NCBI GenBank assembly: GCA_054661495.1
Contig: BAAFSQ010000019.1
Coordinates: forward strand, 1 to 32,000
Direction: 5' to 3'
DNA: 32,000 nt
From: Zygophlyctis sp. KS116
Lineage: Eukaryota > Fungi > Chytridiomycota
The position numbers and the translations under genes were made by a program. Shown here one piece after another: positions 4,482-32,000 of this stretch. The notes beneath the pieces are model-generated. The model had not been told where the DNA came from and searched no databases. It saw nothing but the letters and a program-made list of their open reading frames with translations. Positions within the stretch are counted from its first letter, which is position 1. The number at the start of each line of letters is the position of its first letter.

Positions 4482-6058
4482 ATGAAAGAGTAAGCAGTAA
4501 ACTTGTTTAAATTATAGATCGGCAACTGTTATAAATGCATTGGATCTAAAACAGATTTATCAGGCGATTGATGGAAAAGATATGCAGTCGCAAGTTGGTT
4601 CATACTTGCTGGAAGATGTACTAAGAAATTTATAAATATTAGAAAAAAATTAGACAATTGGCATCAAAAGAAAGAGTCAAGAATTGGGATAATACTGTTT
4701 CCGGACAATGTAGAAAAAGATTAGAAAGAAGAGCTCAAAAGTTGTTGCAAGAAGAAGAGCAAAGACGAGAATTGGATGAAATATTTGCAAAAGAAACTAA
4801 AATTAGAGATCAACAAATTATTGATAAAACTAAACAATTACAGTATGTTGGATCTGATTTGGTTAAAAATTTTCATTCTAGATTGGTTTTACTAGAAGTT
4901 TTACAAGAAAGAGATTTACAAATTGAAAGAAAAAAGAATAAGGGATCTTCAGACTCAAATTTAGATGTAATATACTCTAAAATGTCTTTGGAAAAATTAA
5001 AAAATGAATTACAAGAAGAAAAAATTCAAAAAGAATGTAAAAAGGCTGCAAAAGTGGAAATCGCAAAAGAACAATTACAGCAGTACAAGAAAAAACTTGA
5101 TTTAAAAAAAGCTGAAAGAGAATCTTTTCTACTTGAAGGTCAAAAAATTGCAGAGTTGGATCAAAATTATAAATCTTTACAAAAAGAACAAGACTCTAAA
5201 AAAAGAGAAAAGGCAGTGTCGCTTCGAAATGAACTAGATGATATGAAAAAACAAGTTATTCAAAGAAAAGAAGCCCAAAGAATTTCAGACTTGGAATATG
5301 AAGAAAAAATTAATGCCTGGAAAACTCGTAAAGATCTACAAAATCAGAAAAAGAAGGAGTTATCGGATAAATGGTTCAGCGAAGGGCTTAACCGTAGTTT
5401 AGCCTTGGGAGAAACTCAGCATTTAATATCTAGTAATGCAGATGCAAAACTTCATGAACAAATTACTCTTCGAGTTAAAGAACGAGACTCCAAAGCTTTA
5501 AAAGAGTCTGCTGAAGTTTTAACCAGAAAACAAAAACGTCAGGCTGAAATTAAACAATTTTATTCAGCGTATATGAAGAACAAGGACGAAAAAAAGGTTT
5601 TGAAAAAGGAAGCAGATAAGAAAGAATTGGAAGCTCATATTAAATTAAGAGATGATTATTTAGCACAAAAAGAAGCAGTCAAATCAGAAAAACTAAATTC
5701 AGGAAAAACTCTACAATCTTTCCACAAATCTCAAATTCTTTCAAACGAAGCTGCTAAATCTGCACGCTTTGAATCAGAAAAAGCGCAAGGGACTTACCAA
5801 TCTAAATTGGCCAATACAGAGACTGAAACACTAAAACACTATATGATTGCTGTGTCTAAAGAACCATGGGCAGCCTCTAACCCCCGACTCCTGGCATTTA
5901 TTAAAGACGAAGTCTCAGAAAAGCCTAGGGTTCCTCGACTTGCAGAAAAGTATAGGGTTGACACAACCTCTAGACTAGGCTTTGACACCAAGTATCAGGG
6001 TTGTGATTTCTTGAGAACCAATCCGATTGTAACTGGAAATGCTGTTTTATATAAATGA
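4482..6058 (+). CDS. CFAP210: Cilia- and flagella-associated protein 210 (CCDC173), TPH coiled-coil microtubule inner protein
   Basis: SKERVKNWDNT and QYVGSDLVKNFHSRLVLLEVLQERDLQIE resemble CFAP210/CCDC173 motifs, followed by a long E/K/R coiled coil. ATG 4482 joins in frame through introns 4490-4517 (28 nt) and 4618-4642 (25 nt). Confidence 0.8.
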
Positions 6059-14297: not shown

Positions 14298-15182
14298 TCA
14301 ACTTTTATTAGCTCTGTTTCCCCAACCTTTAGGATTATCATCTTTAAATTCATCCCAAGCTCTCTCCTTCATCAACTTTGTCTCCAAATCTTCTTCATTC
14401 ATATCATCAATAATTTTTTCTGTCTTGCCTTCAGTTCCACCCTTTAGAAAATTCCCACGTTCAAACTCCCTAGTCAAATACTCATCCACAGTCATACTAG
14501 GTAAATTATGACCTGGCTTGAAAACATTATCCTTTAGATCTTGCCTGTTAGATCTTATTATGAATGGCCTAAGAATTTTCCCTTCCTTTGAGAGTAATGG
14601 CCCATTCTTAATTTCAAGCCGTGAGTCTGAATATTGAGGGTTATGTTTAGGCTTTTCATTGTTCAGAGATTCCTCATGTTCTTCTAATAGTTCTATTTCC
14701 ATCGTATTACTTGATAATAATTGCTTTGACTTTAGAATTTGCAATTGAATATTTTCCAAGAATAATTCTCGCTGCGATTCTTCATCATTTCTAGTTTTCA
14801 AGATTTTAATATTTGACTGAATTTCTTTTTCCTTTTTGAAAGCCATAATCAATTCTTGCCTTGATGGTTTACTTTTATTTAAAGTAGCTAGTCCCAATCT
14901 TTCTACCGACTCCAAAAATTCCAACAGATTTTCCCTAGACTTTTTCAGAATTTCTAATCTTTCTCTTGAATTTTCAAAATTCAATTCAGAGAGTGCCAAA
15001 CCTTTGAGGGCCGGAATTTCCAAAAACTTTAAATCCATTGTAGAAATTTCCTTTAGAGATTCATTATCAGAGAATAAATCTAGCGTCAACATCCACTTTT
15101 GACATTTTTCTATTAGTTCTAGTCTCTTGCTAGGATCTGATTCCTGTAGAATTGAATCGTAGAGCGAATTTAAATTTGACAT
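14298..15182 (-). CDS. TAP42: PP2A-associated protein TAP42 / IGBP1 (alpha4)
   Basis: LFSDNESLKEISTMDLKFL, VFKPGHNLPSMTVDEYL, KERAWDEFKDDNPKGWGN. Intronless. Confidence 0.93.
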   Translation of the reverse strand: MSNLNSLYDSILQESDPSKRLELIEKCQKWMLTLDLFSDNESLKEISTMDLKFLEIPALKGLALSELNFENSRERLEILKKSRENLLEFLESVERLGLATLNKSKPSRQELIMAFKKEKEIQSNIKILKTRNDEESQRELFLENIQLQILKSKQLLSSNTMEIELLEEHEESLNNEKPKHNPQYSDSRLEIKNGPLLSKEGKILRPFIIRSNRQDLKDNVFKPGHNLPSMTVDEYLTREFERGNFLKGGTEGKTEKIIDDMNEEDLETKLMKERAWDEFKDDNPKGWGNRANKS

Positions 15183-17341: not shown

Positions 17342-20300
17342 TTATAAATAACTTTTTTCTAATGAATTTCGTATTGATGGGTCTAAAATTGATAGTAGAC
17401 TCTGAAATTCTGAGATTCCAATCGAGTTGCAGTAATATTTGAGTCTAGATGAAATAAAATTTAAAAACTCTGATTGGGTTTGAAATAAAATAGATTCAAG
17501 AGAATCTTGTTCCCATTTTATAGTTGTTGAGAAGCTATGGGTTTTAGATTAGAAAATATACCTATTCTCAAGTAAAATTCCAGAAAAAATAATCATGATT
17601 CCTTGAAATTGAGGTCTAGAAATCAACACTAAAGGTAATAGTTGTGCTAGAGCTGAAGATACTAAAACTCTCTGGTTAGGTTGGGAAAGAGAGTCAAACT
17701 ATCATGTTAAAATATAAAAGTTACCCTGGAAATTAATTCATCTATAAATGAAGATAATAGATGATTAGAGTTTTCAAGACTATTGATTTCCCCAAGAAAG
17801 ATTTGAGGATTAGTCAAAATAATTCTTGATAGGATGAGATTATAATCCATAATAATAACATGTAATTCCTCTCCTTTAATAGTCTCTATAATCATTTTTT
17901 TCAAAATTCCACTTGCGCTGATTTCACTCAAGAGAAGCATTGATGGTGGATTTAATACCTGAATGCAAGTGTCCAACAAATTTAGAATATGTTTTGAGGC
18001 TTCAGGGATTAGACTTCCCAAAAGTATAGATAATTTTGAAATTAGGATGTTTCCATATTCTTGAAAAATGTTTTCTGGTGCTAATTTAATCATAAGAGCC
18101 AGGATTTTCAATACAGATTTAAGACTTTCAGTACCATTGTCCAATAAATTTATAATAAGTGGAATTAGTTGATACAATTGTTGAGTCATAGATTTTGTAT
18201 TCTGAACAATAGCCAAACACAGGTCTAATCCTTCTTCAAGAATGTAAATATGGCTTGGATCGCTAGTGTTTAATGCTGATTGAACAATTGGAATCGCGAT
18301 TGAGAGAGCATAAGTTTCTCCTCCAAGAGCCTATAATTATCAAATAATCCTAAAATACTAAAACTAGGCTAGTGACAATAGACACTATCGCACTCTTAAA
18401 TAAATGCTGGCTGTCCGCATGCTGCCATTGATTTGACAAGGTATTTAATATCTGAGGCGCAAAAGAAGCAGACTTGAATAATTAAAGAAAAAAGTATACC
18501 TGATCTTCCAAGCGCAAGACAAGAACTGAAATAGTGTTCAGTAAACATAGTTTGGATTCAAATTCTTCATATTCATCAAGCAATTTCAGACAATGTCCTA
18601 TAGTTGCGTTAACAAATGGAATAAAGTCCTCCAATTCAAAATCGTAATCGTCAATACATTGTCGCAAACATATAATACTCGTTAATTTAACAACAGAGTC
18701 TGGATCATTTGAAAGATTTAGTAATGCCTCATAGACAATAGGCCGAATTGGCTTTGGTACCTTTACTGAAATCCAACTTTTGATTACCAGTGCGATTCGT
18801 CTGCGAATTATTTTCAACCTACAGTTAAAATCAATTATATTACTCAGCAGACTTATCCATAGTTTCCTTTAGAATAAATGAGCCCAATAAAGCACCAAAA
18901 TCAACGAAATTTGCCAAGTCAGCCGCACATAAGCCAAGCACACAATAGGTAGACTCCTTAACACTTATATTAACATTATTCTCTACAGATGATAAGCATA
19001 GATTTACACTTACTAGTCACAGCTTCTACCATTGAAAGTAATGCAGGAGCCAGAATTTCTCGATGCTGCGAAACAAGATCCACTACTAATTTTTCAGCGC
19101 ATAGCTAAAAGTTAAAAATCCAAATATGAAAATTACACGAACATTGTATTCCCAATGATCCGCTTCTTCTTCTTGAACAAACTGCTCTGGTTCATCTTTC
19201 CAAAAATCCAAATCTTCTTCTGAAAGACAAACATATTTTAAAACCAGCAACTGTAAGCATGATTGCAAAAAATCAGGATTGAATATATTTGAATTTACAA
19301 ATTGTTGGGCATGATTTACTCGAGCTTTAATACTTTCATCTATACCTGAGAAAAAAAAGAATACCTTCACTGACAATATTAAACTCTGAATTCTTGACAA
19401 GCCGTCGTACCAGTTTCAAGGATTGCAAGACAACCTTATCAAAAGCAGCATCTTTTCCTAACTTTTTTAAAATCAGTAATTTTACCAGGAGTAGAATTTT
19501 GAAGAATATTCCAATAAAGAGTCACTACATCCAATAGCCCTGGAGTAAATATAAAATTTACTAGATCTCTCTCTTGTAAATCCAAGTATATTTTTCCTAT
19601 AAGAATTACAAATTTGCATATTTTAGCTGATAGTTTATCAAAATGCGTCCCTAAAACTTAATTTTTTCCAAAATATACTTATTTTTAACATTTCTTGATT
19701 ACAAATAACCAAATTCTTGTAAAATTCCAAAGCTCTTGTATTCTGAGAAAAATCACTATATCCATATACTAATAATCTCCTGCAAGACTTTAAAGCCAGT
19801 AAAGAAATCTCTAGCCTCATATTTGCCTCATCTTGATTTCCTAGAGATATTGAATTGAAAAATGCTGATAAAAATTCATTGAATAGACTAGCAAGAAAAT
19901 CAAGGATTGGAGGCGCAATCCTCATAAACTGGGCTCTACTGGTAGCAAGAGTTTTTGAAGCAAGAGTTTTTATAACAACATGCAGTGTATATAGCCCATG
20001 AATCTGAAAGGACATGGATCCACCAGCAAAACTAGATTTTATAACCTCCATCAGTTGGTCTATTAATTGCGGCCAAAACATTGGATAATCATATCTAGCT
20101 ATTTTTGCCACAATCAGAGAGTGTGATGCATTTAATACCTTGGTCTCATGAGCACCAAAGAATTGCATAATCATTGGACGCAAAACTTGTTTCTCATCTT
20201 CGGTTATCCTAATATTCAGTAAGTGATCATACCCATTTCTAGCATTTTTCCTCCAGTATTTATCAATTCCATTCTTAAAATATAATAATCCAAGTGTTTT

Positions 20301-20450
20301 CAACTTTAGATCAGACTCTTGATCAATCAAGTTCCATAGATTGCTATAGAAGCCTGGATGTCCTTCGCATGACTGAAGCATTTGATCCCCAGACGCTCGG
20401 ATCTCTGGGTCTGGAGAAGAGGCACAAACAAGTGCAGATCTCAAATCCAT
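17342..20450 (-). CDS. IPO11: Importin-11 / Kap120 (karyopherin-beta family)
   Basis: IBN_N motif LYFKNGIDKYWRKNA, IVAKIARYDYPMFWPQL, WKDEPEQF..EE, IIRRRIALVIKSW. Eleven introns: 20209-20232, 19651-19678, 19458-19485, 19340-19364, 19105-19136, 18983-19013, 18819-18843, 18473-18499, 18331-18358, 17699-17724, 17535-17561. Confidence 0.9.
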
Positions 20451-20491: not shown

Positions 20492-23400
20492 TCAATATTT
20501 GGGGTTATTCACCATTGCTGCACGGCTAGGATGTATACCAGGATTTGAGCTTCTTCCTTCTCTACTATCCCTATTAGGATCCCTTGGTACATCACGTTGA
20601 CGGGGTCTAGACTGAGAATGAGATCCGCCACTATCTTTAATCTTCTTGTCAAGAGTCTTTTTTTCATCATCTTTAAAGAAACGAAGCAGGCTATCAACAT
20701 CTCGGAATTTACGCATACGGAATAAAAATCCGTCTGGCTGAATAGTGACGGTTTCACTTTTAACTCTTGCATGAGGATGCATATACACAAGGTAGAAACT
20801 TCCAGGCTTTTCAGATGAAATAGCAAACCCATACATTGATCTTTGGAAATATTTTGCTTGCTCTTCAACGTATTTGTCTAGTATTAATCTGTAATAAATC
20901 TTACACATTTCTTCTTTACTTTTTCTTTGAAATTTAGAATGTTGAATGATATCAGTAATGCGACGTGTCATTGGTTCAATATGTTCTGAAATGATTTGAT
21001 CAATTTCCAAAAACTGCCTATTTTCAATTTGGAGAATTTTCCCAAGACTCCATTCATTTTCTTTTTTGAGTTCGAGTACATCTTAAAAATTAGTAAATGT
21101 TTTTACCTATATGTTGATAAATGTCATCATCGATTTTCCAAGTGATTGAAATATGATCATTTCCTTTGGTTGAAGGACGAACAACGATTTCTCCTCGAGG
21201 CCTTCGGGAAAGATACTCTTCTGCAGCCTTAAAATCTATATTTTTGAAAAATGGATGCTGAATATGACGACTTTGACCACGGCTCTTCTTTTTTGATCCT
21301 ACAAGTGATATGTCGAATATATCCTTCTCTTCCCTTTCAAAATTGAAGAATGTATCACGCACAATTATATCCATGTTACGATCAACTACAGCAGATTTTC
21401 TTATATCCAATTCAAGACTTAGACGTTCTTTGCTAACCTCTAAAACTCGGGCTGGGATTGATTGCCCAGGAATATACAATAGATTTAGTTGTGGATCGTT
21501 TTCCATCTTTTTAGGTATATCAACATTCTTAACGTGCACAACGGCTTCCATTCCAGAAGAATGTTCACAAAAGATAAATCGATCTTTAACCTTTTGAATA
21601 TTGACATTTACTAGAGAGCCCACATGGAGAGTTTCATCCGTCTCATTTGTAAGCATGGTAAATATCTCATCCTGAGAAGCTCCGTGGAATGGCTCACGCT
21701 TTTCACTAAAGGGTGCCATCAGCTCATCTCGCATTTCATTCAAGGCAATTTTCTTCAACTTTCCCTCTGAACGCTCCAATTCGTCTGCATAATCATCCAG
21801 CATTAGCATCAACAGACGATCTGAATCATTTTCCATAATTTCAGCAACATGATGAGAGGGATTGTCGTCATCTCCTGCTGCATCATCAATATCCAATGCA
21901 TCAGCAGCCATTTTTCTTGCAATGTCGTAATCTTCAGGATGAATTCTTGTATCATCCAAGACATCAATAATTAGAGACGGAGTTCGCATAAAATGTCTTT
22001 CTTTTATCCGTATAAAGGAAGAACAGTTAATAAACACTTTTTCGGAACATACTTTCTTGAGTACCAGATCAGCTCGTGATTCTAACTTTCCGCCCTTAAA
22101 GATAAGTAATATTCTGAAATTACCAATCTGCCCAATTTAGAAATAATAGCGCTAGCTTTTCGCGGGCCCAAACCGCTAACAAATTGTAATGCGCCGCGAA
22201 GTTCTTCATTATCCAAGCAGAGATTGATATCTAATCCACTAATTATTAGGTTAATTTTATATACCAGCTAGCTATAACAGTCATGAAAGATCGTGTAATC
22301 GCCCTTTTGAGCTTATCCTCTGGCAACTGAAATCTTAGTTATTAAAACGTACCAATTTTTGTAATGGATGCAGGTGAAGATGTTTATAATCATCCTCCAC
22401 ATTCATCAGTCTTGAATATTCCATAATTGGATCTTGAACCTTCCTTGCTAAGGATACAAGGTATCTAACCATAGGATCTGAATCGGGGTAGTATTTCTGG
22501 CCCTCTTTAGAGTTCATAAATACTCTTGCAGCGTCATCATCAACCAAAATAATCGGAATTTGCTTCGAAAACGTTTTCCTGGATTTTCCTTTGTTCACTA
22601 TTTCACTGACAATATTATATAAGTGAGTTAATATTCCTGGATGAAAACCAGCTAATACGATGACATCGGGCTCATAAATCGCAACCTTATCACTAAATTT
22701 CTCCATATCTGCCTCTCTATCACGATCTCCGAGCTTAGAAAATGTACAAGAATGATTGAGCCTATGATTTGTCTCTACCACAACCATATGAGTTACAGAG
22801 GTTCGATCACCTTGACCCCAAGATAAAGCCATAACCTTTGCTGGGGTATCATCCATGAACTCATCATCTTCTTGAGCGGGCCTAAAAGGAGCCATATTTA
22901 ATTTCTAAAATATCAGATTATATCTAGTACCTTTTCTAAAATAAACCTGCACATACTAGAAACATAATCAATGGCACTCATTCGCAGCGTTTCTTTTAGC
23001 CATTTGCTGGTTTGCTCAAAGAGGATTGACTTTGAAGCGAAATCCGCAATTTTAACTCTTTGCTCGTTCCATTTTTCCGCAACAGCATTAACATAGTCAT
23101 TTTGAATATTTTTATATATATCTTTTAAGAGCTCCACTTCCATATCTACTTTTGCAGACACTGTGACTAATCCCTCATTTTCAGCAGTATTTATTTGAAG
23201 AAATTGGCCATCTTTAAAGTCTAAAACCGGTTTTGCAGTCAAATATTTAAATGGCTATAGTTAAATTGACAATGATAATATACATAGTATTTGTGACCAG
23301 GCTTAATTTCCGTTTTCCCTTTCATTGTTGGTGTGACTGTAATTACGGCATCAGTTGAATATACTCTGCGTAAGAAATTACGCAGTGTAGGATCGGCAGC

Positions 23401-25020
23401 GATTTCTTGAGCAATCATTTCACGAGCAGCTGTTTTTAAAAATCATTAAATTACCTGCCAAGACTTTTTCTGTATTGGGAAACAAAGTACAAACATAATT
23501 TTCAGCAGCCTCTTCCGGAGTGATTGAAGGATCTTCAGGAAAATGCAGTGATTGTCGGGTTATCAAACTCTGTGAATATTTTTTAAGATCGACGCCAAAC
23601 ATTTTGGCAAGATTGCCCAAATTATTTCTTTTCGCACCTTCATACGCCACTCGCCAGCCTGGTTTCTTAAACATGCGGGATTTTTGAACGTCTGATTCTG
23701 CCAAATCTAGCCCATAATGAATCTGAAGATATAGCTGCATATCTGCAATTTCATCTAGTGTTGATGCTTTTTCAATCTGATCATTTGCATAATTATCTTG
23801 TGCCGCACCTTGAGACTTTTTTTGAATATCTTCAAAAGATGCTTTTAAACTTTTTCGCTTCATTTCAATTGTTAAAAATGCCTCATCCAAATCATAAATA
23901 GTCCAGAGATCTGCAGGGTCCAAACACTGCATAAAATAATCTTTTCGATGGGTAGCAATAAACGGAACTTCTAATTGTTCGATTCTTATAAATTTCAATA
24001 CATCTAGAATCACTTTCAAAATCTGACTATTTGCAGCTGATGGTTGTAAAGTTTCATCTCTTTTCAACAGTCGAGCAATATAAATAGACTCTCTAGTCAA
24101 TTGACCTTCATCAGGAGGTGGGAAATTTTTCCGATCAACTTGATATCGTTCTGGAATATCTACACTTCTAATGATTTCATCTTCTTCTGTCAACATCTTT
24201 TGAGCAATCACTCCTGGCTCATAAAGATCCTTTAATTTAACTTCTTTTGCCTTTTTAATTTGTAAAGAATCTTGAGATTCACCAACAGCATCATCATGAA
24301 CAAAATTATCCTAAAATTTAAAAAGAATAAATTACAGGATCTAAAGCATATTCATAGTCCATACCATCTCCAAAAAGTTCCACAATTTCAGCCCAAGCTC
24401 TAAAATTTAAATATTTTAAAAAAAATACTCATCAGAGACCCCATAGTCTGCACCTTTATTCCCCATGAATTCCAACCGTTCCCTTCTTTTCCTAGCACGT
24501 TCTCTTCTACTAGCCTCATCTTCATCATCATCAATAACAAAATCATCCATATAATCATCTGGCTCATATAATTCTCTCGAATCAAAACCTTCAACCTGAC
24601 CCTCCTCTTCTTGCTCCTGATCATGAAAGAGAGCAGCAAGATCTTTTTCCTGATCCATCTTCTTTCGCAAACGTTTAAACTAGAATTTAAAACCTATAAA
24701 TACTTTTTTAGACGATGCCCCAATATTTTCATTAATCAAATCTAAATCATCGTCTTCCAGTCCCTCAGACTCTGCATCTGATTGCCTTTCTACAATAAGT
24801 TTTAAATTCTTTACCTGATCTTGATCTCTTTCGCACAACCTCGTCCTCCTCATCATCATCAGCAATAAACTTCTTATCAGCCTCTGTGGGTTCTTCTTCC
24901 AGCTCATCATCCTCCTCATCATCAGAGTATACCTAGTATTACGAATGTATATCATACACCCATTTTATTTGACGATGGCTTTAGTACATCTTCGCCTTCC
25001 GAATCAGACATTTTTGACAT
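20492..25020 (-). CDS. SPT6: Transcription elongation factor / histone chaperone SPT6
   Basis: Acidic N-terminus, DIPERYQ, EVPFIATHRKDY, LDDTRIHPEDYDIARKMAADAL, an S1 domain and a tandem SH2 (IVVRPSTKGNDHISITWK). Twelve introns: 24933-24957, 24790-24814, 24680-24703, 24400-24428, 24311-24335, 23430-23454, 23255-23283, 22905-22930, 22327-22352, 22239-22264, 22095-22123, 21082-21106. Confidence 0.96.
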
Positions 25021-25127: not shown

Positions 25128-26807
25128 ATGTCCCTATTCAATAGGAGAATCTTAAAATCTCTTGTAGCTGCATTTATTGCAATGATTGGACTAATAATCA
25201 TTTATTCCGTTGCGATAAAATACTCGCAAAATGTAAAAGTTTTGAAAAATGAATTATTTTTACAGAATCAAACTGATGGACTGGAAGAGAGGAAAAGGAT
25301 TATAGGTTTGCTCAGGCATGCTTGGGATGGATACGAAAAATATGCTTTTGGAGCGGATATGCTGTTGCCGATAAGTAAAAGTAAGGAAGAGTGGTTCGGA
25401 TTAGGTCTTAGTATATTGGACACCCTGGACACTGCATTGATAATGGGACAGGAGGATATCTACCAGAAATGTCGTACATGGATAAAAAATGAATTTAAAA
25501 TTGATGCAGAAAAATATACTATTTCTATATTTGAAACTAATATAAGAATAGTTGGAGGTTTCTTATCAACATATTCTCTCACAAAAGATAAACTATTTTT
25601 GGAAAAAGCAAAACAGGTTTTTATTAAGTTTTAAAATTATAGACGGCAGATAAATTACTTGAATATTTTCATCCAGTGTCTGGTATACCAAGTATGTATA
25701 TGGAAAGTCTTCAACGGAGGGGTAGTACGACTTTAGCAGATGCGGGAAGTTTATCTCTTACTTTTAAATACTTGTCTTATGTAACAGGGGATCCAAAGTA
25801 TTGGAATGCAGTCACCAAAATCTCGAAAAAATTTTATCCGAGTCTTTTGAATCAAGGGGTCTTGGGTTCACAAGTTGATGTAGAGTCTGGAAATATTTAT
25901 GGTACTCCAACTATAGGCCCTGGGGCGGATTCTTACTATGAATATCTTGCAAAACAGTATATTCAGACTAATAGAGTTGAAGAGGGGTTTCCTCCTCAAT
26001 GGGAAGTTTTGATGAAGAGTATCCGTTCATCATTAAAGACAAGCGCAAAAGGGCATTTTATGTTTGTAGATGGAGGTTATGGTCTAACGTGTCATCTTGA
26101 TTGTTTTTTAGCTGGTACTATTGGTCTATATGCCATTCAAGGTGCAAGAAATTCGAATTCTCTTAAATTAACAAGTGGACAATTACAAGATATCGATTTA
26201 GCTGAAGAATTGACCAGAGGTTGCTACGAATTATATCATCAGACCAAAACTCATCTTTCTCCTGAAATAGTTTACTGGAACTATGATGTAGAGGATTCTG
26301 AGCCTCTTACAGCTCATAAAACACCGCAAAAAAGTACTGCTAAATCAACATACTCTCTTTACAAAGGAACAGTTTCTAGACTTTCACCATTCGATTCTTT
26401 TACATCTGGAGATTTTAAAATTAAAGATTCACGTTATATTCATCGTCCTGAAACTATGGAATCATTATTTTACATGTACAGAATAACTGGCAAGCAGATG
26501 TATAGAGACATGGGATGGGAAATATTTTTAGCCTATGAAAAGTATTTAAAAACTGATGATGCAGGCTATGCAGGACTGGTATTTTTTTTTAAAAACTAAC
26601 ATTAAGGATGATGTTGATGACACAAACTCGTCAAAAATTGATAAGATGGAATCCTTCCTATTTGGGGAATTCATAAAATATCTTTACTTACTGTTTTGCG
26701 ATGAATCGGTAATACCATTGGATAAGTATGTATTTAATACAGAGGCACACCCCCTCCCAATATTCAATGTAACAGCTGAATTTAGAAAAATGGTTGACTG
26801 GCTATAA
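25128..26807 (+). CDS. MNS1: Class I alpha-1,2-mannosidase (GH47), type II membrane protein
   Basis: N-terminal TM anchor, [48 protein letters not shown]. Introns at 25617-25642 (26 nt) and 26579-26606 (28). Confidence 0.92.
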
Positions 26808-26899
26808 TTTTGTTAAATTTTGAAAAAACTAGAAAATAAATATTCATTTGGTTATAAGCTATGTAAATCGACCACTTTATCTTGTTCCTAGTATAGCGT

Positions 26900-27493
26900 T
26901 CAGACTTTTTTAGCTATTTGAATTGCACCCTTACAACCATTCTGAATAATCTGTTCTGATATATTTGCCACAATGCAACCTCCATCATTTCCCTGGCTTG
27001 CAATTTCGCGGTGAGAATCTTCTTCATCTCTACACTTTTTTATAGCCTTTATTAGTGGCTCAAGTTCAGCATCTTTTTCATTGAGTAACTGCCTAATTTG
27101 ACTATCCCATTAATTTACTAATACTTACTCATTATAATGCTCCACAATAACCTTTTCAACCGCTCTCGTACCCAAGAATGCACCACTTAATCCAAAACTT
27201 GCAGTCACGTGACCTAAAGCATATCCGAGAGTAGCCCATAAAGGATTTAGTAATGATGGCCTAACTCTATTTTGTATCATTAGCTGATTGAATAATTTTA
27301 AATGCTCTTCTTCATGTCCCTTCATTTCCTCTTTTTTAATTTATGCAAGTACCTTTGCAAGAGATTGATTTTCCCCTTTTAAAACATTGGCTTGAGCCTC
27401 GTACATATTAACGGCGGCGAGTTCTCCGGCATAGTTTACTCTAAGCATTGATTCTAGACAAATCTTTTTCCTTGCTTGAGGGAATTTGAACAT
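26900..27493 (-). CDS. COQ7: 5-demethoxyubiquinone hydroxylase COQ7/CLK-1 (di-iron), about 180 aa
   Basis: MLRVNYAGELAA, EEEH, RVRPSLLNPLW, AVEKVIVEHYNDQ, RDEEDSH. Introns at 27329-27352 (24 nt) and 27102-27128 (27). Confidence 0.92.
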
Positions 27494-27535
27494 GGTTGTA
27501 CAAGTAAATCTTATCGCCCTAAATCTTCAAGAAGA

Positions 27536-28421
27536 ATGACCATTGATCATTATCAGATCCTCTCGGACCCTGAATCTCAACTACCTCTAAGATTTAGATC
27601 TCTGTTTGCACTTAAATCATTGTATGGCTATGATGCAGCCTTGGGAATTGCAGAGTCCCTTTTAAAGTCTTTGGATAATGTTTTATTATGTCATGAGATG
27701 GCATATGTTTTAGGACAGATTGGAAATCCGATCGTCTGTCCGATACTTTCTCAAGTCTTAAGGGATGAATCGGCAGACTCTATGATAAGACATGAGGCAG
27801 CCGAAGCTTTAGGAGCAATTGGTTCAAAAGAATCTATTCCTATATTGACAGAATTCGCTAATCATTCTTGTTTAGAAATTAGTCAGACTTGTCAATTAGC
27901 ATTAGATCTTTTAAAACATAATTCATCAAATCCTAAAAAATTCAACAAGAAATATGATAGTACTGATCCTGCTCCTCCTTTGGAAATTAATGATATTACT
28001 AAATTAGAAAAAGAATTGATGGATTCTAGTAAAAGTTTATTTTCAAGATATAGATGTATGTTTTCTCTTCGAGATATAGGAACAGATGAAGCAGTCAATG
28101 TAATAATTTTAGAATTTTTAAAGAAAATAGGCTCTTGGGAAAGGATTTCAAGATAAATCAGCCTTGTTTAGACATGAAATTGCATATGTTTTTGGACAAT
28201 TACAATCACCAGCATCAATTCCTTTTTTAATTCCAGTTTTGGAAAATAAAGAAGAACATGCCATGGTCCGACATGAAGCTGCAGAAGCTTTAGGATCTAT
28301 AGGAACTACAGAGTGTATCGAGACTTTGGAATTATACTCAAAGGATTTACAAGTAGTTGTAGCAGAGAGTTGCATGGTTGGATTGGATATGGCAACTGCT
28401 GAATTTGTTCCATTGAATTAG
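27536..28421 (+). CDS. DOHH: Deoxyhypusine hydroxylase (LIA1)
   Basis: Four HE motifs ([32 protein letters not shown]) and the STDPAPP linker. Intron at 28100-28130 (31 nt). The first in-frame ATG is at 27536. Confidence 0.96.
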
Positions 28422-28683
28422 GGAAATTTTACATAAATCTATAATCTAGAAATTTATGTATTGACTGTTGAGAATATTATTAAGCAAAATGGCGCCTTTA
28501 GTGTCGTCTGCACTATAAATGACTTTAAGGGTACCAAATTCAGCAGGATGTCCATACAGACTTTTCCAAAATAACAATTAATGCAATCTCTAAAGATGGC
28601 ATTGTAACATTTAACGTGTTGGTTGATGAAATTTAAGCTTTTTAACAAATTTTTTTCTATTTTCCGAAAATATTCGCGTTTTA

Positions 28684-31432
28684 ATGAAAGTCTCAAACGG
28701 AATCTATGGTAAACTAACAGTCATTAGAGCCAATGGTGACGATGCAAACTTTTTCCCATTGAATGAATTAGAAAATACGCTAGGAAGAGACCCTGCATGC
28801 CTTGTGCATTTGCGGTCATGGGATATTTCAAGAATTCATGCAAGAATTGTTTTTAATGCTGAAACTAGAGAGGTAAATTCCAATATTTATATCAGGCGAC
28901 CATCATTGACTCTAGTGTTAATGGTACAATTCTAAATGAACAAGAGTTAACGGAGCCGACGACGTTGAAGAGTAATGATGTAATTCAGATGGGGCAAAGA
29001 TCTTTTAGATTTGAAAAGGCAGATCCTGTATGGCTATTTATTCTTATTTTAGATTTCTGCGAGTAAAATGGTGTCTATTAAACAAAAATTGAAAAATTCT
29101 CCTGGATACTTTAAAAAACAAGAGTCTATAGTAGAATTACCACCAACACCAAAAAAAGCAAAAACGGGTAGTATGTCTATGAAGAAAATGCTTTTTAAAG
29201 ATTTGATTTCCGCAAAGTATGCAGAAAAAGATCTCTTAAAAGATACTCAATTGGATAATAGTACAAAGTCAAGTGTGGAAACTAGTCCGTTTCATTCAAA
29301 TGTTCAAACTCCAGTCGAAAGTCCGACGTCTGACCACAAAGTAGGGCTAGGTGAGGCTAGTATTATTGATGATACAGCTCAAAGAGTAAAAGTTACACCA
29401 AAATCGGCCCCAAGAACAATGGTTGGAAAAGTATCGCCCTTTAAAAAATCATTTAGTGTTGCAAATACTCCAAAAGGAGCCATGGATTTCCTGAAACAAT
29501 TAAAGGATTCCAAAAAGATTGTAAAGAATTCACCAAAAGTTATAATGACGACTCCAAGATCTTCAAACACGGCTCGAAAAGGTTCTACGCCAAGCTCTTC
29601 TCTTTCTATAAAGCATGCAAGCATTAGAAAATCTGTCTCTGCTTTTCAATCGGTAGCTAAATCTGCCAAAAAGCAGCCATCAATATTGGATGCGAGTAAA
29701 GATGTCTTTTTTGAGCAAATTCAAGGATTTGTAGGATATTCAAAGGTTCCAGCATCCGAAAAGTCTTGTGGGAAAGTTAGTCCTGAATTAGAAAGTAATA
29801 GGCGTAGAAGCGTGACTTTTGGTCCACCTGTATGTTTTATTTTTCTTATAGATTAGTTGGAGCCTGAAATTTTTGATAAAAGAAATGCTCCTTCTTCTCC
29901 TCTTACTCGTGGAGATCCGGCTCCCCAGTTTAGCTCAAAGGATGGGACACCAATTCACAAATCTATTCTGAAATACTCTGTAGAGGAAAACTTATCGGTG
30001 AAAAGCAAAAAGTCAAATAGAGTCTCAAAATTGTACACTGCTGAAGTATTTAACTCCAGTCCCCTCTCCATAAGTACAGAATTGAAACCAAGAATGGGTG
30101 ACAGTATTCAAATGCAGAAATCATCAGAAACTCACTCTGAAGAAAAATATTTGCCATTGGCAGATTGTGATATTCATGACGGCTTGGAAGATGTTGAGGA
30201 CAATAATGAATATGATCTCCCTTTAGAATTAGAAATGGCTAAACCTAAAAAGGAGAATGTTATAATAACTAATTATTCGGGAATGAAGCAACTGTTAAAG
30301 ACCCCTATGGCGTTTCATCAAAAAGATGCTGATCTTTCTGGTTTGTCATCACTTTTTGATTCTCCCAAACCCATTGTACCAAAGATTAACTCTCCAGTCG
30401 TTTCTAAAGGATCAGAATCTCCTATTTTATATAGTGGAGTGCGCAAACTCGTTCAGACACCAAAGCCCGATCTACCAGTATCTTATCTTGGAATCAAAGA
30501 GCTTGTGAAAACACCTCAACATGCCTCTATTGTATCTCTAGTTGGAGTCAAAGAGTTGGTTCAAACTCCCAAGGATGGTGACGTGATATCTCTTGTAGGA
30601 CTTAAAGAAATGGTCAAAACACCAAAGCCAGCTCATATCACCTCTCTTGATGGCGTAAAGGAGCTTTTGGAAACTCCTTCAGTTTCCAATAAGAGTTTAA
30701 CCGTGGAAAGCCAAGACAAACCTACAGTTTCTAAATCTATAAAGTCTACACAAGCAGTTAAACCAAGGGAATCAATCCCTTCTACCTTTGAAAAAACTCA
30801 GATGCCTACGGATCCCGAGCCTTTAATTCATCCCGCCCCAACAAGAATGACCCGATGCCGAGTCAAGGCAATAATTGAAAACCAGGAAAAAGACAAGGAA
30901 GAAAAGGAAAAAGAGCAAGACATGCAAGTTTTAGAAAAGACTGTCAAGGTAATTTATTATAAACTAATCCCAGCCATCTAAACTTAAAGTCCCAAAGGAC
31001 CTTAGTATTCCTGCGTCATCATTTTATGGCACAGCAAAAAGCACTGATATATTAGGGCAGACTAAAGATCCGATAATTATTGTCAAGGACAAGCCCAAAG
31101 ATCCCATAATTATTGTCAAGGACAAGCCCAAAGATGAGACCATTAAAAAAAGAACCAAGAAGGAATCTAAAATCCCTTGTGCTCCTAGTATCAAAAAAGT
31201 AGAAGATGTAATTGAAAACCAATCTGAACCTAATTTAACAAGACGTACTACAAGAAGAGCACGTGTTTTACAAGAATCTAATGAAATTGCAAAAGACCTA
31301 TCTTTGCCTGATAAGCAGACTCTAGCAGAAGATCCTGTAGATAAAACGTCTGTAGTAGTAGAAGAAGAAGTCAAATCGCGTAAACGCAAATCGCCAGAAA
31401 ACAGCGTGCGACGATCATTACGCCATCGTTAA
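28684..31432 (+). CDS. Ki-67-like protein (FHA + PP1-binding motif + GxKELxxTP repeats + basic tail), about 882 aa
   Basis: Introns at 28873-28895 (23 nt), 29028-29052 (25), 29830-29856 (27) and 30949-30973 (25) give one frame. It has an FHA domain with GR, SxxH and NGT ending in RSFRFE, then RRRSVTFGPPLEPEIFDKRNAPSSPLTRG, seven TP/SP-ending repeats and C-terminal RRSLRHR. Confidence 0.8.
30421..30678 (+). repeat. 18-aa (54-nt) degenerate coding tandem repeat, 5 copies, Ki-67-motif-like
   Basis: YSGVRKLVQTP, YLGIKELVKTP, LVGVKELVQTP, LVGLKEMVKTP and LDGVKELLETP at exact 18-aa spacing. Confidence 0.9.
31064..31135 (+). repeat. 33-nt tandem duplication (KDPIIIVKDKP x2)
   Basis: 31064-31096 and 31097-31129 differ by one synonymous base. 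Confidence 0.92.
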
Positions 31433-31439
31433 GATTAAT

Positions 31440-32000
31440 ATGAGTTCTACAATTGTTTATAACCAATGCATGAAGAAGTTGGATGAGTTGAAGAATCTAT
31501 TAGAAGAGAATGCATCTATTCCTATTGCCACTGCCTCCCTTGATTCTTTACAGCAGAGTATTGGAGATTTACAAAAGTTTGCCAAGAGTGAAGTCGATGC
31601 ATCAAGGAGAGAAATTGGACTTTTAAGAGTCAAGAAATTACAACAGGAAGCTGGAGTCTTGCAAGAATCAATCAATTTATTAAAAGCCAAAGCCCAAGAG
31701 CGAATATCACTGGAACGGAATAGTCTTTTGGGTAAATTTGAAGAGTCTCCATCAACCATTCTTGATATTGATTATTTTAACAAGGAATCTGGAATCCTTG
31801 ATGCATCTGGAGACAGAATAGAAGAATTTATTGGACTAGGAAAGACTGCATTACAAGATTTATACGAACAAAGGAGCATGTTAAAAGTAATTTTAGTTTT
31901 TAAAGGAATAGTCTACTAGAAGAAGACTACTGGATGCTGCTCATACACTTGGACTATCAGGGTCTGTTATAAGATTTATAGAACAAAGGACAAGAACAGA
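31440..32000 (+). CDS. BOS1: ER-Golgi Qb-SNARE Bos1/membrin (GOSR2), truncated by the window end
   Basis: ERNSLL, IEEFIGLGKTALQDLYEQRSMLK, then after a 25-nt intron (31887-31911) STRRRLLDAAHTLGLSGSVIRFIEQR. Confidence 0.88.

What the first reader, a model, noticed from the sequence alone, without database searches (positions are those of the whole stretch)
28684..31432. A compact Ki-67-like protein with the ordered Ki-67 architecture in an apparently non-animal (chytrid-like) genome
Seen: splicing four 23-27 nt introns merges several ORF fragments into one ~882-aa protein. It has an N-terminal FHA (GKLTVIRANGDDANFFPL...LGR...SRIH...NGT...DVIQMGQRSFRFE), then RRRSVTFGPPLEPEIFDKRNAPSSPLTRGDP, then DLSGLSSLFDSP plus six GxKxLxxTP repeats, then a K/R-rich tail (TRRTTRR, RRSLRHR). 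It is otherwise disordered and rich in S/T-P sites. Known: human Ki-67 begins RLVTIKRSGVDGPHFPL...RSFRYE, carries the PP1 motif RRRVSFGGHLRPELFDENLPPNTPLKRG shared with RepoMan/CDCA2, then FKELFQTP repeats and an LR tail. It organises the mitotic chromosome periphery and is mostly discussed as an animal protein. Inference: this is a true orthologue, so the Ki-67/PP1 chromosome-periphery system would predate the animal-fungal split and have been lost in yeasts. The PP1 motif is split by an intron, so naive ORF calls would miss it. Similar proteins may already carry automated annotations in early-diverging fungi; I cannot check that.
Basis: partly seen in the sequence, partly recalled or inferred. 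Interest (0 to 1): 0.88.

Follow-up and report, generated by a model that had tools for sequence, protein, structure and literature searches.

The report
Fungal Ki-67/bridgin-family gene, already-known family
This freshwater zoosporic fungus has a real five-exon gene for a compact relative of the animal proliferation protein Ki-67, but fungal (including chytrid) relatives of Ki-67, called bridgin, were published in 2021, so it is a well-preserved new member of a known family and not a discovery.

Summary
At 28684-31432 (+), five exons joined by four GT-AG introns of 23, 25, 27 and 25 nt encode 882 aa. The parts in order are an FHA domain split by intron 1, an RVxF-type PP1 site (RSVTF) split from its Ki-67/RepoMan-type extension by intron 3, seven 18-aa Ki-67-motif units, and a basic tail. 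A metatranscriptome read crosses the exon 3/4 junction exactly. Four syntenic relatives keep the same exons and intron positions.

A profile of exon 4 finds a named fish Ki-67 as its best outside hit (E 7e-80). A profile of animal Ki-67 FHA domains picks this locus as its best match in the genome. The genome is fungal: it has Zn2Cys6 domains, and every named relative of a neighbouring gene is an early-diverging fungus.

The idea is not new. Sridhar et al. 2021 (bridgin, Cryptococcus) named Ki-67 as bridgin's metazoan homologue and listed homologues in Batrachochytrium, Rozella, Paramicrosporidium and Dictyostelium. A 2026 preprint extends this. A Gorgonomyces protein with FHA plus PP1_bind is already in NCBI.

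The modest addition is that this lineage keeps sequence-level PP1-domain and repeat similarity that both papers treat as lost outside the FHA domain. Function is inferred. The joined protein was never searched; all searches were exon by exon.

The parts
28684..28872 (+). Exon 1 (63 aa): start codon and N-terminal half of the FHA domain, including the extra N-terminal strand (GKLTVIRANGDD..FPL) typical of Ki-67 FHA
   Evidence: Pfam FHA 23.6 bits, profile 2-29. Animal Ki-67 FHA profile 31.8 bits, positions 3-60. 84-92% identical in three syntenic relatives.
28873..28895 (+). Intron 1, 23 nt, GT-AG
   Evidence: The FHA profile continues across it. The position is conserved and the frame changes in relatives L002 and L003.
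28896..29027 (+). Exon 2 (44 aa): C-terminal half of the FHA domain, ending RSFRFEKADP
   Evidence: Pfam FHA 28.3 bits, profile 34-67. Best solved structure is the human Ki-67 FHA (2aff/1r21), E 0.004 alone and 2.1e-5 as a 4-species profile; the next best is KIF1C at 8e-4.
29028..29052 (+). Intron 2, 25 nt, GT-AG
   Evidence: Relatives have a 24-nt gap at the same place, and the alignment resumes from the first residue of exon 3, before the internal ATG at 29068.
29053..29829 (+). Exon 3 (259 aa): disordered, lysine-rich linker (net +26, 12 S/T-P sites) that ends with the PP1 RVxF-type site
   Evidence: No Pfam hit. Composition. 47-69% identity to relatives.
29800..29829 (+). RRRSVTFGPP: RVxF-type PP1 docking site. 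RSVTF (29806-29820) fits [RK]-x(0,1)-[VI]-{P}-[FW], with a threonine at the x position as in RepoMan RVTF
   Evidence: Sequence. Motif definitions come from the preprint and PMC5005033. The contiguous SVTFGPPLSPEIFDK is seen in the annotated Gorgonomyces protein P0054.
29830..29856 (+). Intron 3, 27 nt, GT-AG; contains an in-frame TAG and splits the PP1-binding domain
   Evidence: The RNA read of run X23 joins 29829 to 29857 exactly. The DNA run X4 keeps the intron.
29857..30948 (+). Exon 4 (364 aa): rest of the PP1-binding domain, acidic spacer, Ki-67-motif repeats, and the first basic TR..R element
   Evidence: Pfam PP1_bind 15.5 bits, profile 13-55. Profile A1 finds Ki-67 proteins.
29857..29925 (+). 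LEPEIFDKRNAPSSPLTRGDPAP: the phi-phi pair (EI) plus a KiR-SLiM-like extension. It matches 8 of the 14 specified positions of FDxxLP(P/A)N(T/S)PL(R/K)(R/K)Gx(T/S)P
   Evidence: Motif from PMC5005033. This stretch is almost invariant in five related sequences.
30274..30681 (+). Seven Ki-67-motif units (GxKELxxTPK type, one of them degenerate); the last five are tandem with an 18-aa period
   Evidence: Regex positions. Single fish KI67R repeats score 20-45 bits against the profile. The same 18-aa period is seen in tapeworm and metagenome homologues.
30838..30870 (+). PTRMTRCRVKA: a basic T/L-R..R element conserved in the relatives (VTRSLRSR in P0002 and P0004)
30949..30973 (+). Intron 4, 25 nt, GT-AG (inferred; no RNA evidence)
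   Evidence: Relative L004 continues in another frame. Relatives P0002 and P0004 have no intron here and run on in one ORF to a similar basic C-terminus.
30974..31432 (+). Exon 5 (152 aa plus TAA): basic tail, net +12, with TRRTTRR (31238-31258) and the C-terminal RRSLRHR (31409-31429); candidate chromatin/DNA-binding end
   Evidence: Family members end similarly (PLRSLRKRH, ATRARRTRR, RRSSRLQH).
31064..31135 (+). 33-bp tandem duplication inside exon 5 (2.2 copies, encoding KDPIIIVKDKP); a natural variant has one more copy
   Evidence: TRF score 137. The metagenome contig of run X4 'goes back 33'.

Best explanation
This is the orthologue, in a deep-branching freshwater zoosporic fungus, of the Ki-67/bridgin family. 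The family consists of long, mostly disordered, phospho-regulated scaffolds that tether protein phosphatase 1 and other factors to mitotic chromatin.

Shown here: the gene is one spliced unit. It encodes, in the Ki-67 order, an N-terminal Ki-67-type FHA domain, an RVxF + phi-phi + KiR-SLiM-like PP1 docking domain, 18-aa Ki-67-motif repeats, and a basic C-terminal tail.

Inferred mechanism: the basic tail binds DNA/chromatin non-specifically. The FHA domain binds a phospho-threonine partner (NIFK in vertebrates, outer-kinetochore components in Cryptococcus). RSVTF and the following roughly 25 residues dock PP1. Docking can be switched off by mitotic-kinase phosphorylation of the Thr inside the motif, as in RepoMan. 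The 25 S/T-P sites let CDK change the charge and extension of the linker through mitosis.

Sequence alone cannot decide whether the protein coats chromosomes (Ki-67-like) or concentrates at kinetochores (bridgin-like).
For: Gene model: FHA halves contiguous across intron 1; an RNA read across junction 3; conserved intron positions with frame shifts in relatives L002-L004, and the same gene order (GH47-COQ7-DOHH-FHA...repeats-V-SNARE) in L002-L005.

Family: exon-4 profile A1 against 1.84 billion representatives gives 101 hits. The best non-relative is P0007, 'proliferation marker protein Ki-67 [Thalassophryne amazonica]', E 7e-80. Of 25 long hits, 18 carry PP1_bind, 13 FHA and 10 KI67R.

Reciprocal test: an animal Ki-67 FHA profile (A3) scores the two window exons at 31.8 and 28.8 bits, against 29.9 bits for the next locus. 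Yet this locus ranks only about 11th-12th for generic Pfam FHA. PDB: the Ki-67 FHA is the best match for exon 2.

Named fungal homologue: P0054 (Gorgonomyces haynaldii) has FHA at 53 bits and PP1_bind at 34 bits (cut-off 27), is collinear with this gene, and its FHA is nearest to the Ki-67 FHA in PDB (1.4e-8, against MEK1 at 2.3e-6).

Only one PP1_bind locus exists in the genome.

Fungal genome: 5 Zn2Cys6 matches, no nuclear-receptor or cadherin domains. All named TAP42 relatives are early-diverging fungi at 40% identity or less.

Literature: bridgin has FHA, a PP1 site, repeats and a basic domain; it co-purifies with PP1; and the human Ki-67 basic domain can replace its own (PMC7794384).
Against: PP1_bind does not reach Pfam's cut-off on either exon alone (15.5 and 19.7 bits against 27). 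The joined sequence was not scored. Pfam KI67R gives no hit on exon 4; the similarity lies in the short core motif, which could in principle be convergent. Exon 1 alone is nearer to the MDC1 FHA (E 0.04) than to the human Ki-67 FHA (E 1.5) in PDB. The FHA tree is poorly resolved. No hNIFK_binding match was found in the genome (the genome is incomplete). Only one of four junctions has RNA support, from a single depth-2 record. No functional data exist for any chytrid homologue.
Confidence: 0.85

Rival explanations
1. Same family, but the working role is bridgin-like: an outer-kinetochore-to-chromatin linker recruited through the FHA domain and the disordered region, not a chromosome-surface coat.
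For: Bridgin is the only fungal homologue studied experimentally (PMC7794384). Exon 1's highest identity in the FHA alignment is to the Vanrija bridgin-like protein (35% over 55 columns). No NIFK-binding motif was found in the genome.
Against: The disordered region is much closer to animal Ki-67 (285 bits for fish, 119-127 bits for tapeworms) than to the basidiomycete protein (26.9 bits). It has the canonical Ki-67/RepoMan PP1 domain, whereas bridgin has an 'unconventional' PP1 site. Sridhar et al. see bridgin as a possible compensation for the loss of conventional (CCAN) kinetochore linkers in basidiomycetes. Whether this genome keeps those linkers was not examined here.
Confidence: 0.3
2. 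Convergence: an unrelated FHA protein that independently gained a PP1 docking motif and TP-rich repeats, so it is not an orthologue of Ki-67.
For: Short linear motifs evolve easily. Exon 1 is nearest to MDC1 in PDB. The FHA tree is unresolved.
Against: Three independent modules occur in the same order as in Ki-67. Together they give E 7e-80 to a named Ki-67 and the best genome-wide match to a Ki-67 FHA profile. The PP1 extension beyond RVxF was reported for Ki-67 and RepoMan only. Intermediates exist in tapeworms, Gorgonomyces and Dispira.
Confidence: 0.05
3. Two or more separate genes: a small FHA protein, and a PP1/repeat protein starting at the ATG at 29068.
For: An ATG at 29068 follows a stop at 29064-29066 if intron 2 is not spliced. 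Prokaryote-style gene callers split the locus in the relatives. There is no RNA evidence for junctions 1, 2 and 4.
Against: Only one base would separate the two genes. Conservation in relatives starts five residues before that ATG, exactly at the predicted 3' splice site. The FHA domain itself needs intron 1. Homologues in Gorgonomyces, tapeworms and fish have FHA and PP1_bind in one protein.
Confidence: 0.03
4. The contig is animal contamination, so a Ki-67 gene here is unremarkable.
For: The nearest sequence relatives of the repeat region outside the lineage are animal proteins.
Against: The same 23-27 nt introns and synteny occur in four related freshwater or estuary metagenome contigs. All named relatives of the neighbouring TAP42 gene are fungi. 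The genome has Zn2Cys6 domains and no cadherin or nuclear-receptor domains. The assembly is 12.7 Mb.
Confidence: 0.01

Closest known systems
Ki-67 (MKI67) of vertebrates and the Ki-67-like proteins of invertebrates
   Same: The order is N-terminal FHA, then an RVxF/phi-phi/KiR-SLiM PP1 domain, then tandem repeats with the core G-phi-K-E-L-phi-x-T-P (human FKELFQTP), then a basic C-terminus. The protein is mostly disordered with one S/T-P per about 35 aa, is lysine-rich with a low R/K ratio, and has a net positive charge.
   Different: It has 882 aa against about 3,000. Its repeats are simple 18-aa units, not the ~120-aa units of human Ki-67, so Pfam KI67R does not match. KiR-SLiM is only 8/14 to the published consensus. 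The site reads RSVTF where Ki-67 has RVSF. No NIFK-binding motif was detected in the genome. Localisation is unknown.
Bridgin (Bgi1) of Cryptococcus neoformans and its basidiomycete homologues (Sridhar et al. 2021, PMC7794384)
   Same: It is a fungal protein with an N-terminal FHA, a PP1 site, a repeat-bearing unstructured middle and a basic C-terminal domain. That paper already named Ki-67 as the metazoan homologue and listed homologues in Batrachochytrium, Rozella and Paramicrosporidium.
   Different: Bridgin's PP1 site is 'unconventional' and lies right after the FHA domain (aa 161-164). Its middle region is acidic and has its own consensus motif. The exon-4 profile scores the Vanrija bridgin-like protein at only 26.9 bits, against 119-285 bits for animal Ki-67 proteins.
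Gorgonomyces haynaldii hypothetical protein EDD86DRAFT_275143 (P0054, 1279 aa)
   Same: It is a named chytrid with the same architecture: FHA 22-84, PP1_bind 370-399 with SVTFGPPLSPEIFDK, GVKELF-type repeats at 600-800 and a basic end.
   Different: The sequence relationship is distant: 27-38% identity in the FHA domain and 30% in the repeats. It is longer. It is annotated only as a hypothetical protein.
RepoMan (CDCA2)
   Same: It shares the PP1-binding domain (Pfam PP1_bind). The Thr inside RVTF, whose phosphomimetic T394D mutant binds PP1 about 30-fold more weakly, is mirrored by the T of SVTF here.
   Different: RepoMan has no FHA domain and no Ki-67-motif repeats. The genome has a single PP1_bind locus, so no separate RepoMan-like gene was seen.
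MDC1
   Same: It has an N-terminal FHA followed by a long S/T-P-rich disordered repeat region. Its FHA is the best PDB match for exon 1 alone (E 0.04-0.08).
   Different: MDC1 ends in tandem BRCT domains and has no PP1_bind. No BRCT was found in any exon, and the exon 2 and repeat evidence points to Ki-67.

Membership tests
Ki-67 family | N-terminal FHA domain of the Ki-67 subtype | tested here: met
   Pfam FHA is over the cut-off in both exon halves. An animal Ki-67 FHA profile gives its best genome-wide match here, 31.8 + 28.8 bits against 29.9 for the next locus. Exon 2's best PDB hit is the Ki-67 FHA. Caveats: exon 1 alone is nearer to MDC1, and the tree is unresolved.
Ki-67 family | PP1-binding domain (Pfam PP1_bind: RVxF + phi-phi + KiR-SLiM) downstream of the FHA domain | tested here: inconclusive
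   The exon-4 part scores 15.5 bits, and the six-frame read scores 19.7 bits, against a cut-off of 27. The joined sequence was not scored. RSVTF fits the RVxF pattern, EI stands as the phi-phi pair, and KiR-SLiM is 8/14. The junction is RNA-supported. Homologues pass: P0054 at 34 bits, P0023 at 36.5, P0070 at 40.4.
Ki-67 family | Pfam KI67R repeat (112-position model) | tested here: not met
   There is no KI67R hit for exon 4 even at E <= 10. Relative P0004 reaches only 17.4 bits, on profile positions 80-112.
Ki-67 family | Tandem copies of the core Ki-67 motif (G-phi-K-E-L-phi-x-T-P) | tested here: met
   There are six clear units and one degenerate unit, five of them tandem at an 18-aa period. 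The profile hits proteins with genuine KI67R repeats: the named fish Ki-67 at E 7e-80, with 20-45 bits per repeat.
Ki-67 family | C-terminal basic LR-type chromatin-binding domain | tested here: inconclusive
   Exon 5 has net +12 over 152 aa, with TRRTTRR and a terminal RRSLRHR. Similar ends occur in family members. There is no model for this domain, and DNA binding cannot be tested here.
Ki-67 family | Localisation to the mitotic chromosome periphery and surfactant function | not testable with these tools
   This needs tagging or antibodies in a chytrid, or expression in MKI67-knockout cells.
Bridgin (Bgi1) family | Architecture used by Sridhar et al.: N-terminal FHA, unstructured centre, basic C-terminus | tested here: met
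   The criteria are quoted. A chytrid homologue (B. dendrobatidis) is already in their list.
Bridgin (Bgi1) family | Outer-kinetochore recruitment | not testable with these tools
MDC1 | C-terminal tandem BRCT domains | tested here: not met
   No BRCT family appears in any of the five exons at E <= 10.

The most novel reading that the evidence does not exclude
These zoosporic fungi preserve a near-ancestral Ki-67. If so, the common ancestor of animals and fungi already had the full set: a Ki-67-type FHA, the KiR-SLiM PP1 pocket-binder (thought to be confined to Ki-67 and RepoMan), and an 18-aa G-phi-K-E-L-phi-x-T-P-K unit. That unit has been kept for over a billion years in an otherwise fast-evolving disordered region. 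It would therefore be a functional binding motif with an unknown partner, and basidiomycete bridgin would be a derived kinetochore-specialised offshoot.
Probability: 0.45. Interest if true: 0.5.

Novelty: new member of a known kind. Interest (0 to 1): 0.33.

Why it matters
It does not change the picture that Ki-67 has fungal relatives; that was published in 2021 and again in 2026. It does add a useful data point. Both papers identified distant homologues by the FHA domain and general architecture, and the preprint states that the disordered part has no sequence conservation. In this lineage and in Gorgonomyces, the PP1-binding domain and the repeat core are still recognisable by ordinary profile searches. 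These proteins therefore link animal Ki-67 and basidiomycete bridgin at sequence level. They point to the 18-aa unit as the likely primary repeat. At 882 aa, the protein is also a small natural version that could be used to ask which Ki-67 modules are essential and whether the ancestral job was chromosome coating or kinetochore linkage.

Tried and rejected
1. Exon 4 alone against PDB found nothing relevant. The Ki-67:PP1 peptide structures were not recovered because the RVxF half lies in another exon.

2. Exon 1 against PDB, alone and as a 4-species profile, put MDC1 ahead of Ki-67 at weak E-values. I do not read this as MDC1 membership, because there is no BRCT and exon 2 and all other modules point to Ki-67.

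3. An FHA tree with the two exons kept as separate rows was poorly resolved. Six of the seven other FHA domains sampled from the genome formed their own clade (87/89). Exon 2 fell among the Ki-67 rows. Exon 1 grouped weakly (82/84) with the Vanrija bridgin-like protein and a long-branch row. This is consistent but not decisive.

4. Pfam hNIFK_binding in the genome gave no match. The genome is incomplete, so this says little.

5. Runs X22 and X24 gave no junction information; X24 laid nothing.

6. No DNA could be fetched for P0023 (assembly GCA_041443045.1), so its organism and any upstream FHA exon remain unknown.

7. Not done: scoring, folding or complex prediction of the joined 882-aa protein.

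8. Two literature searches ('Ki-67' with 'chytrid', and 'Ki-67' with open/closed mitosis and Ichthyosporea) found nothing on point.
Full report
**What is there.**

- Five exons: 28684-28872, 28896-29027, 29053-29829, 29857-30948 and 30974-31432.
- Four GT-AG introns of 23, 25, 27 and 25 nt, all between codons.
- 63+44+259+364+152 = 882 residues with no internal stop.
- Every search was exon by exon, by reference.

**Is the splicing real?**

Four lines of evidence support it.
- **Domain continuity.** Pfam FHA matches exon 1 on profile positions 2-29 and exon 2 on positions 34-67, both over the cut-off. One domain is therefore cut by intron 1.
- **RNA.** In an estuary metatranscriptome (run X23), a record lies on 29857-29996 without a mismatch. 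It carries ten extra letters, TGGTCCACCT, which are exactly the last ten bases of exon 3. A DNA run (X4) has a contig that runs straight through the intron. This is direct, though thin (depth 2), evidence for the intron that splits the PP1 site.
- **Relatives.** Four related contigs from freshwater or estuary metagenomes (L002-L005) share the same gene order: GH47 mannosidase, COQ7, deoxyhypusine hydroxylase-like HEAT protein, FHA exons, long repeat ORF, V-SNARE. In L002-L004 the exon boundaries fall at the same places, with 24-28 nt gaps and frame changes that require splicing. Conservation is highest in the FHA domain (84-92% in exon 1, 66-82% in exon 2) and lower in the disordered parts (46-69%).
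- **One gene, not several.** Two relatives (P0002, P0004) lack intron 4 and run in one ORF from the PP1 extension to a basic C-terminus ending RRSSRLQH or RRSSRLKH. This ties exon 5 to the gene. Conservation also begins five residues before the internal ATG at 29068, at the predicted 3' splice site. That argues against a separate downstream gene.

**What family is it?**

- **Forward search.** A profile of exon 4 from five related sequences (A1) was run against 1.84 billion representative proteins and gave 101 hits.
  - After the close relatives, the best hit is P0007 (E 7e-80, 13 matched stretches). NCBI names it proliferation marker protein Ki-67 of the toadfish Thalassophryne amazonica.
  - P0007 carries FHA, PP1_bind and six KI67R repeats.
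  - Of 25 long hits scanned, 18 have PP1_bind, 13 have FHA and 10 have KI67R.
- **Repeat period.** Single fish repeats score 20-45 bits against the profile. The same 18-aa period of G-phi-[KR]-x-L-phi-x-T-P units is seen in tapeworm proteins and in many metagenome proteins.
- **Reverse search.** A profile of nine animal Ki-67 FHA domains (A3) was searched against the window's own 12.7-Mb genome. The two window exons came first and third (31.8 and 28.8 bits, profile positions 3-60 and 65-99). The best other locus scored 29.9 bits. With the generic Pfam FHA model, this locus ranks only about 11th-12th of 15 matches. It is therefore specifically Ki-67-like, not merely a good FHA domain.
- **Solved structures.** The human Ki-67 FHA is the best match for exon 2: E 0.004 alone, and 2.1e-5 as a four-species profile, with KIF1C next at 8e-4.
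- **Weak points.** Exon 1 alone is nearer to the MDC1 FHA at weak E-values. An FHA tree with the two exons kept as separate rows was poorly resolved. I report these as weaknesses, not as support.

**The PP1 site.**

Exon 3 ends RRRSVTFGPP and exon 4 begins LEPEIFDKRNAPSSPLTRG.
- RSVTF fits the RVxF pattern quoted in the 2026 preprint.
- EI stands where Ki-67 has the phi-phi pair EL.
- The following stretch matches 8 of the 14 specified positions of the KiR-SLiM consensus of Kumar et al. 2016 (PMC5005033). That study reported the motif only in Ki-67 and RepoMan.
- Pfam PP1_bind sees the exon-4 part at 15.5 bits, or 19.7 bits in the six-frame genome search. Both are under the 27-bit cut-off, because the first dozen profile positions lie in the other exon.
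- Homologues without that handicap pass: Gorgonomyces P0054 (34 bits), P0023 (36.5), P0070 (40.4), and tapeworm P0024 (38.9).
- The genome has only this one PP1_bind locus.

**Whose genome is it?**

It is not an animal genome.
- It has five Zn2Cys6 domains over the cut-off and no nuclear-receptor zinc finger or cadherin.
- The neighbouring TAP42 gene finds only fungi among its named relatives: Mortierella, Polychytrium, Spizellomyces, Polyrhizophydium, Phlyctochytrium, Synchytrium, Piromyces and others. None exceeds 40% identity.
- A TPH-domain (flagellar-type) gene lies in the window.
- The DNA recurs in freshwater, lake and estuary metagenomes.
- Earlier notes of this scan call it a freshwater chytrid with 24-30 nt introns. 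My tests agree with a deep-branching zoosporic fungus, though not with a particular order.

**What was already known.**

This is where the finding loses most of its claimed novelty.
- **Sridhar et al. 2021** (Nat Commun 12:146, PMC7794384) described bridgin (Bgi1) of Cryptococcus neoformans.
  - It has 1295 aa, with an N-terminal FHA, a PP1 docking site, 13 repeats in an unstructured middle and a basic C-terminal domain.
  - It co-purifies with PP1, and its basic domain can be replaced by that of human Ki-67.
  - The authors state that Ki-67 is the bridgin homologue in metazoa.
  - Their Supplementary Data 4 lists homologues in Batrachochytrium dendrobatidis, Rozella allomycis, Paramicrosporidium, Smittium, Jimgerdemannia, Pneumocystis, Saitoella and Dictyostelium. 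It lists none for S. cerevisiae, S. pombe, Spizellomyces or Allomyces.
- **A June 2026 preprint** (10.64898/2026.06.18.733134) reports Ki-67-like proteins in sponges, molluscs, insects and fungi (Malassezia, Mycoemilia, Paramicrosporidium), and in Dictyostelium and Thecamonas.
- **My own search** found named fungal relatives already in NCBI:
  - Gorgonomyces haynaldii (a chytrid; FHA + PP1_bind; 'hypothetical protein');
  - Dispira parvispora (partial, PP1_bind);
  - Vanrija pseudolonga (bridgin-like, FHA).

**What is modestly new.**

- Both papers found distant homologues by the FHA domain plus general architecture. [quoted passage not shown]
- Here the PP1 domain beyond RVxF and the repeat core are recognisable by plain HMM searches across the animal-fungal divide.
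- The disordered region is far closer to animal Ki-67 (119-285 bits) than to the basidiomycete bridgin-like protein (26.9 bits).
- This suggests these zoosporic fungi keep a near-ancestral form and that bridgin is the derived one. I have not tested this phylogenetically.

**Mechanism.**

Architecture and homology are shown. Function is inferred from the family.
- A basic tail on chromatin.
- An extended, CDK-regulated linker with 25 S/T-P sites, about one per 35 aa. The preprint gives the same density for human Ki-67.
- A PP1 dock that mitotic-kinase phosphorylation of the motif's Thr could switch off. The RepoMan T394D mutant binds PP1 about 30-fold more weakly.
- An FHA domain for a phospho-threonine partner.
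- Chromosome coat or kinetochore linker remains open. I put about 0.3 on a bridgin-like role.

**Verdict.**

The evolutionary inference is right but already published, and the functional inference is unproven. This is a new, unusually well-preserved member of a known family.

Noticed in passing
window 31064-31135: There is a 33-bp tandem duplication in exon 5 (2.2 copies, 97% match, encoding KDPIIIVKDKP). A freshwater metagenome contig (run X4) carries one more copy, so the copy number varies in nature.
   Followed up: partly
window 25128-31919; loci L002-L005: The gene order GH47 mannosidase, COQ7 (minus strand in the relatives), DOHH-like HEAT protein, Ki-67-like gene, V-SNARE is kept in four relatives. 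Their Ki-67-like exons are only 46-92% identical to the window's. This is long-lived microsynteny in very compact genomes.
   Followed up: partly
window 31430-31440: The Ki-67-like gene's TAA stop (31430-31432) is only 7 bases from the ATG of the next gene (V-SNARE-like, 31440). The upstream DOHH-like ORF ends 262 bases before the start codon. Intergenic spacers are extremely short.
   Followed up: no
proteins P0006, P0007 (fish Ki-67), P0024/P0119 (tapeworms), P0009: Fish and tapeworm Ki-67 repeats are built from about 18-20-aa sub-units of the same G-V-K/R-x-L-M/L-K-T-P-K type as the fungal ones. The human ~120-aa repeat may therefore be a higher-order unit of an old 18-aa unit.
   Followed up: partly
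protein P0023 (NCBI assembly GCA_041443045.1, 11.5-kb contig): This is an intron-free 948-aa ORF with a strong PP1_bind (36.5 bits) and eight repeats, but no FHA inside the ORF. The organism is unknown because the DNA could not be fetched.
   Followed up: no
window 1759-4171 (-), 4658-6058 (+), 14298-15182 (-), 19638-20450 (-), 21090-24211 (-): The neighbours are ordinary housekeeping genes: HSP90 (split into two ORFs), a TPH-domain flagellar-type protein, TAP42, an importin-beta-like protein and SPT6.
   Followed up: no
window 29830-29856: If intron 3 were retained, its in-frame TAG would end the protein right after the RVxF site. That would give an FHA + RVxF protein of about 375 aa without the KiR-SLiM, repeats or tail. 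There is no evidence that this form is made.
   Followed up: no
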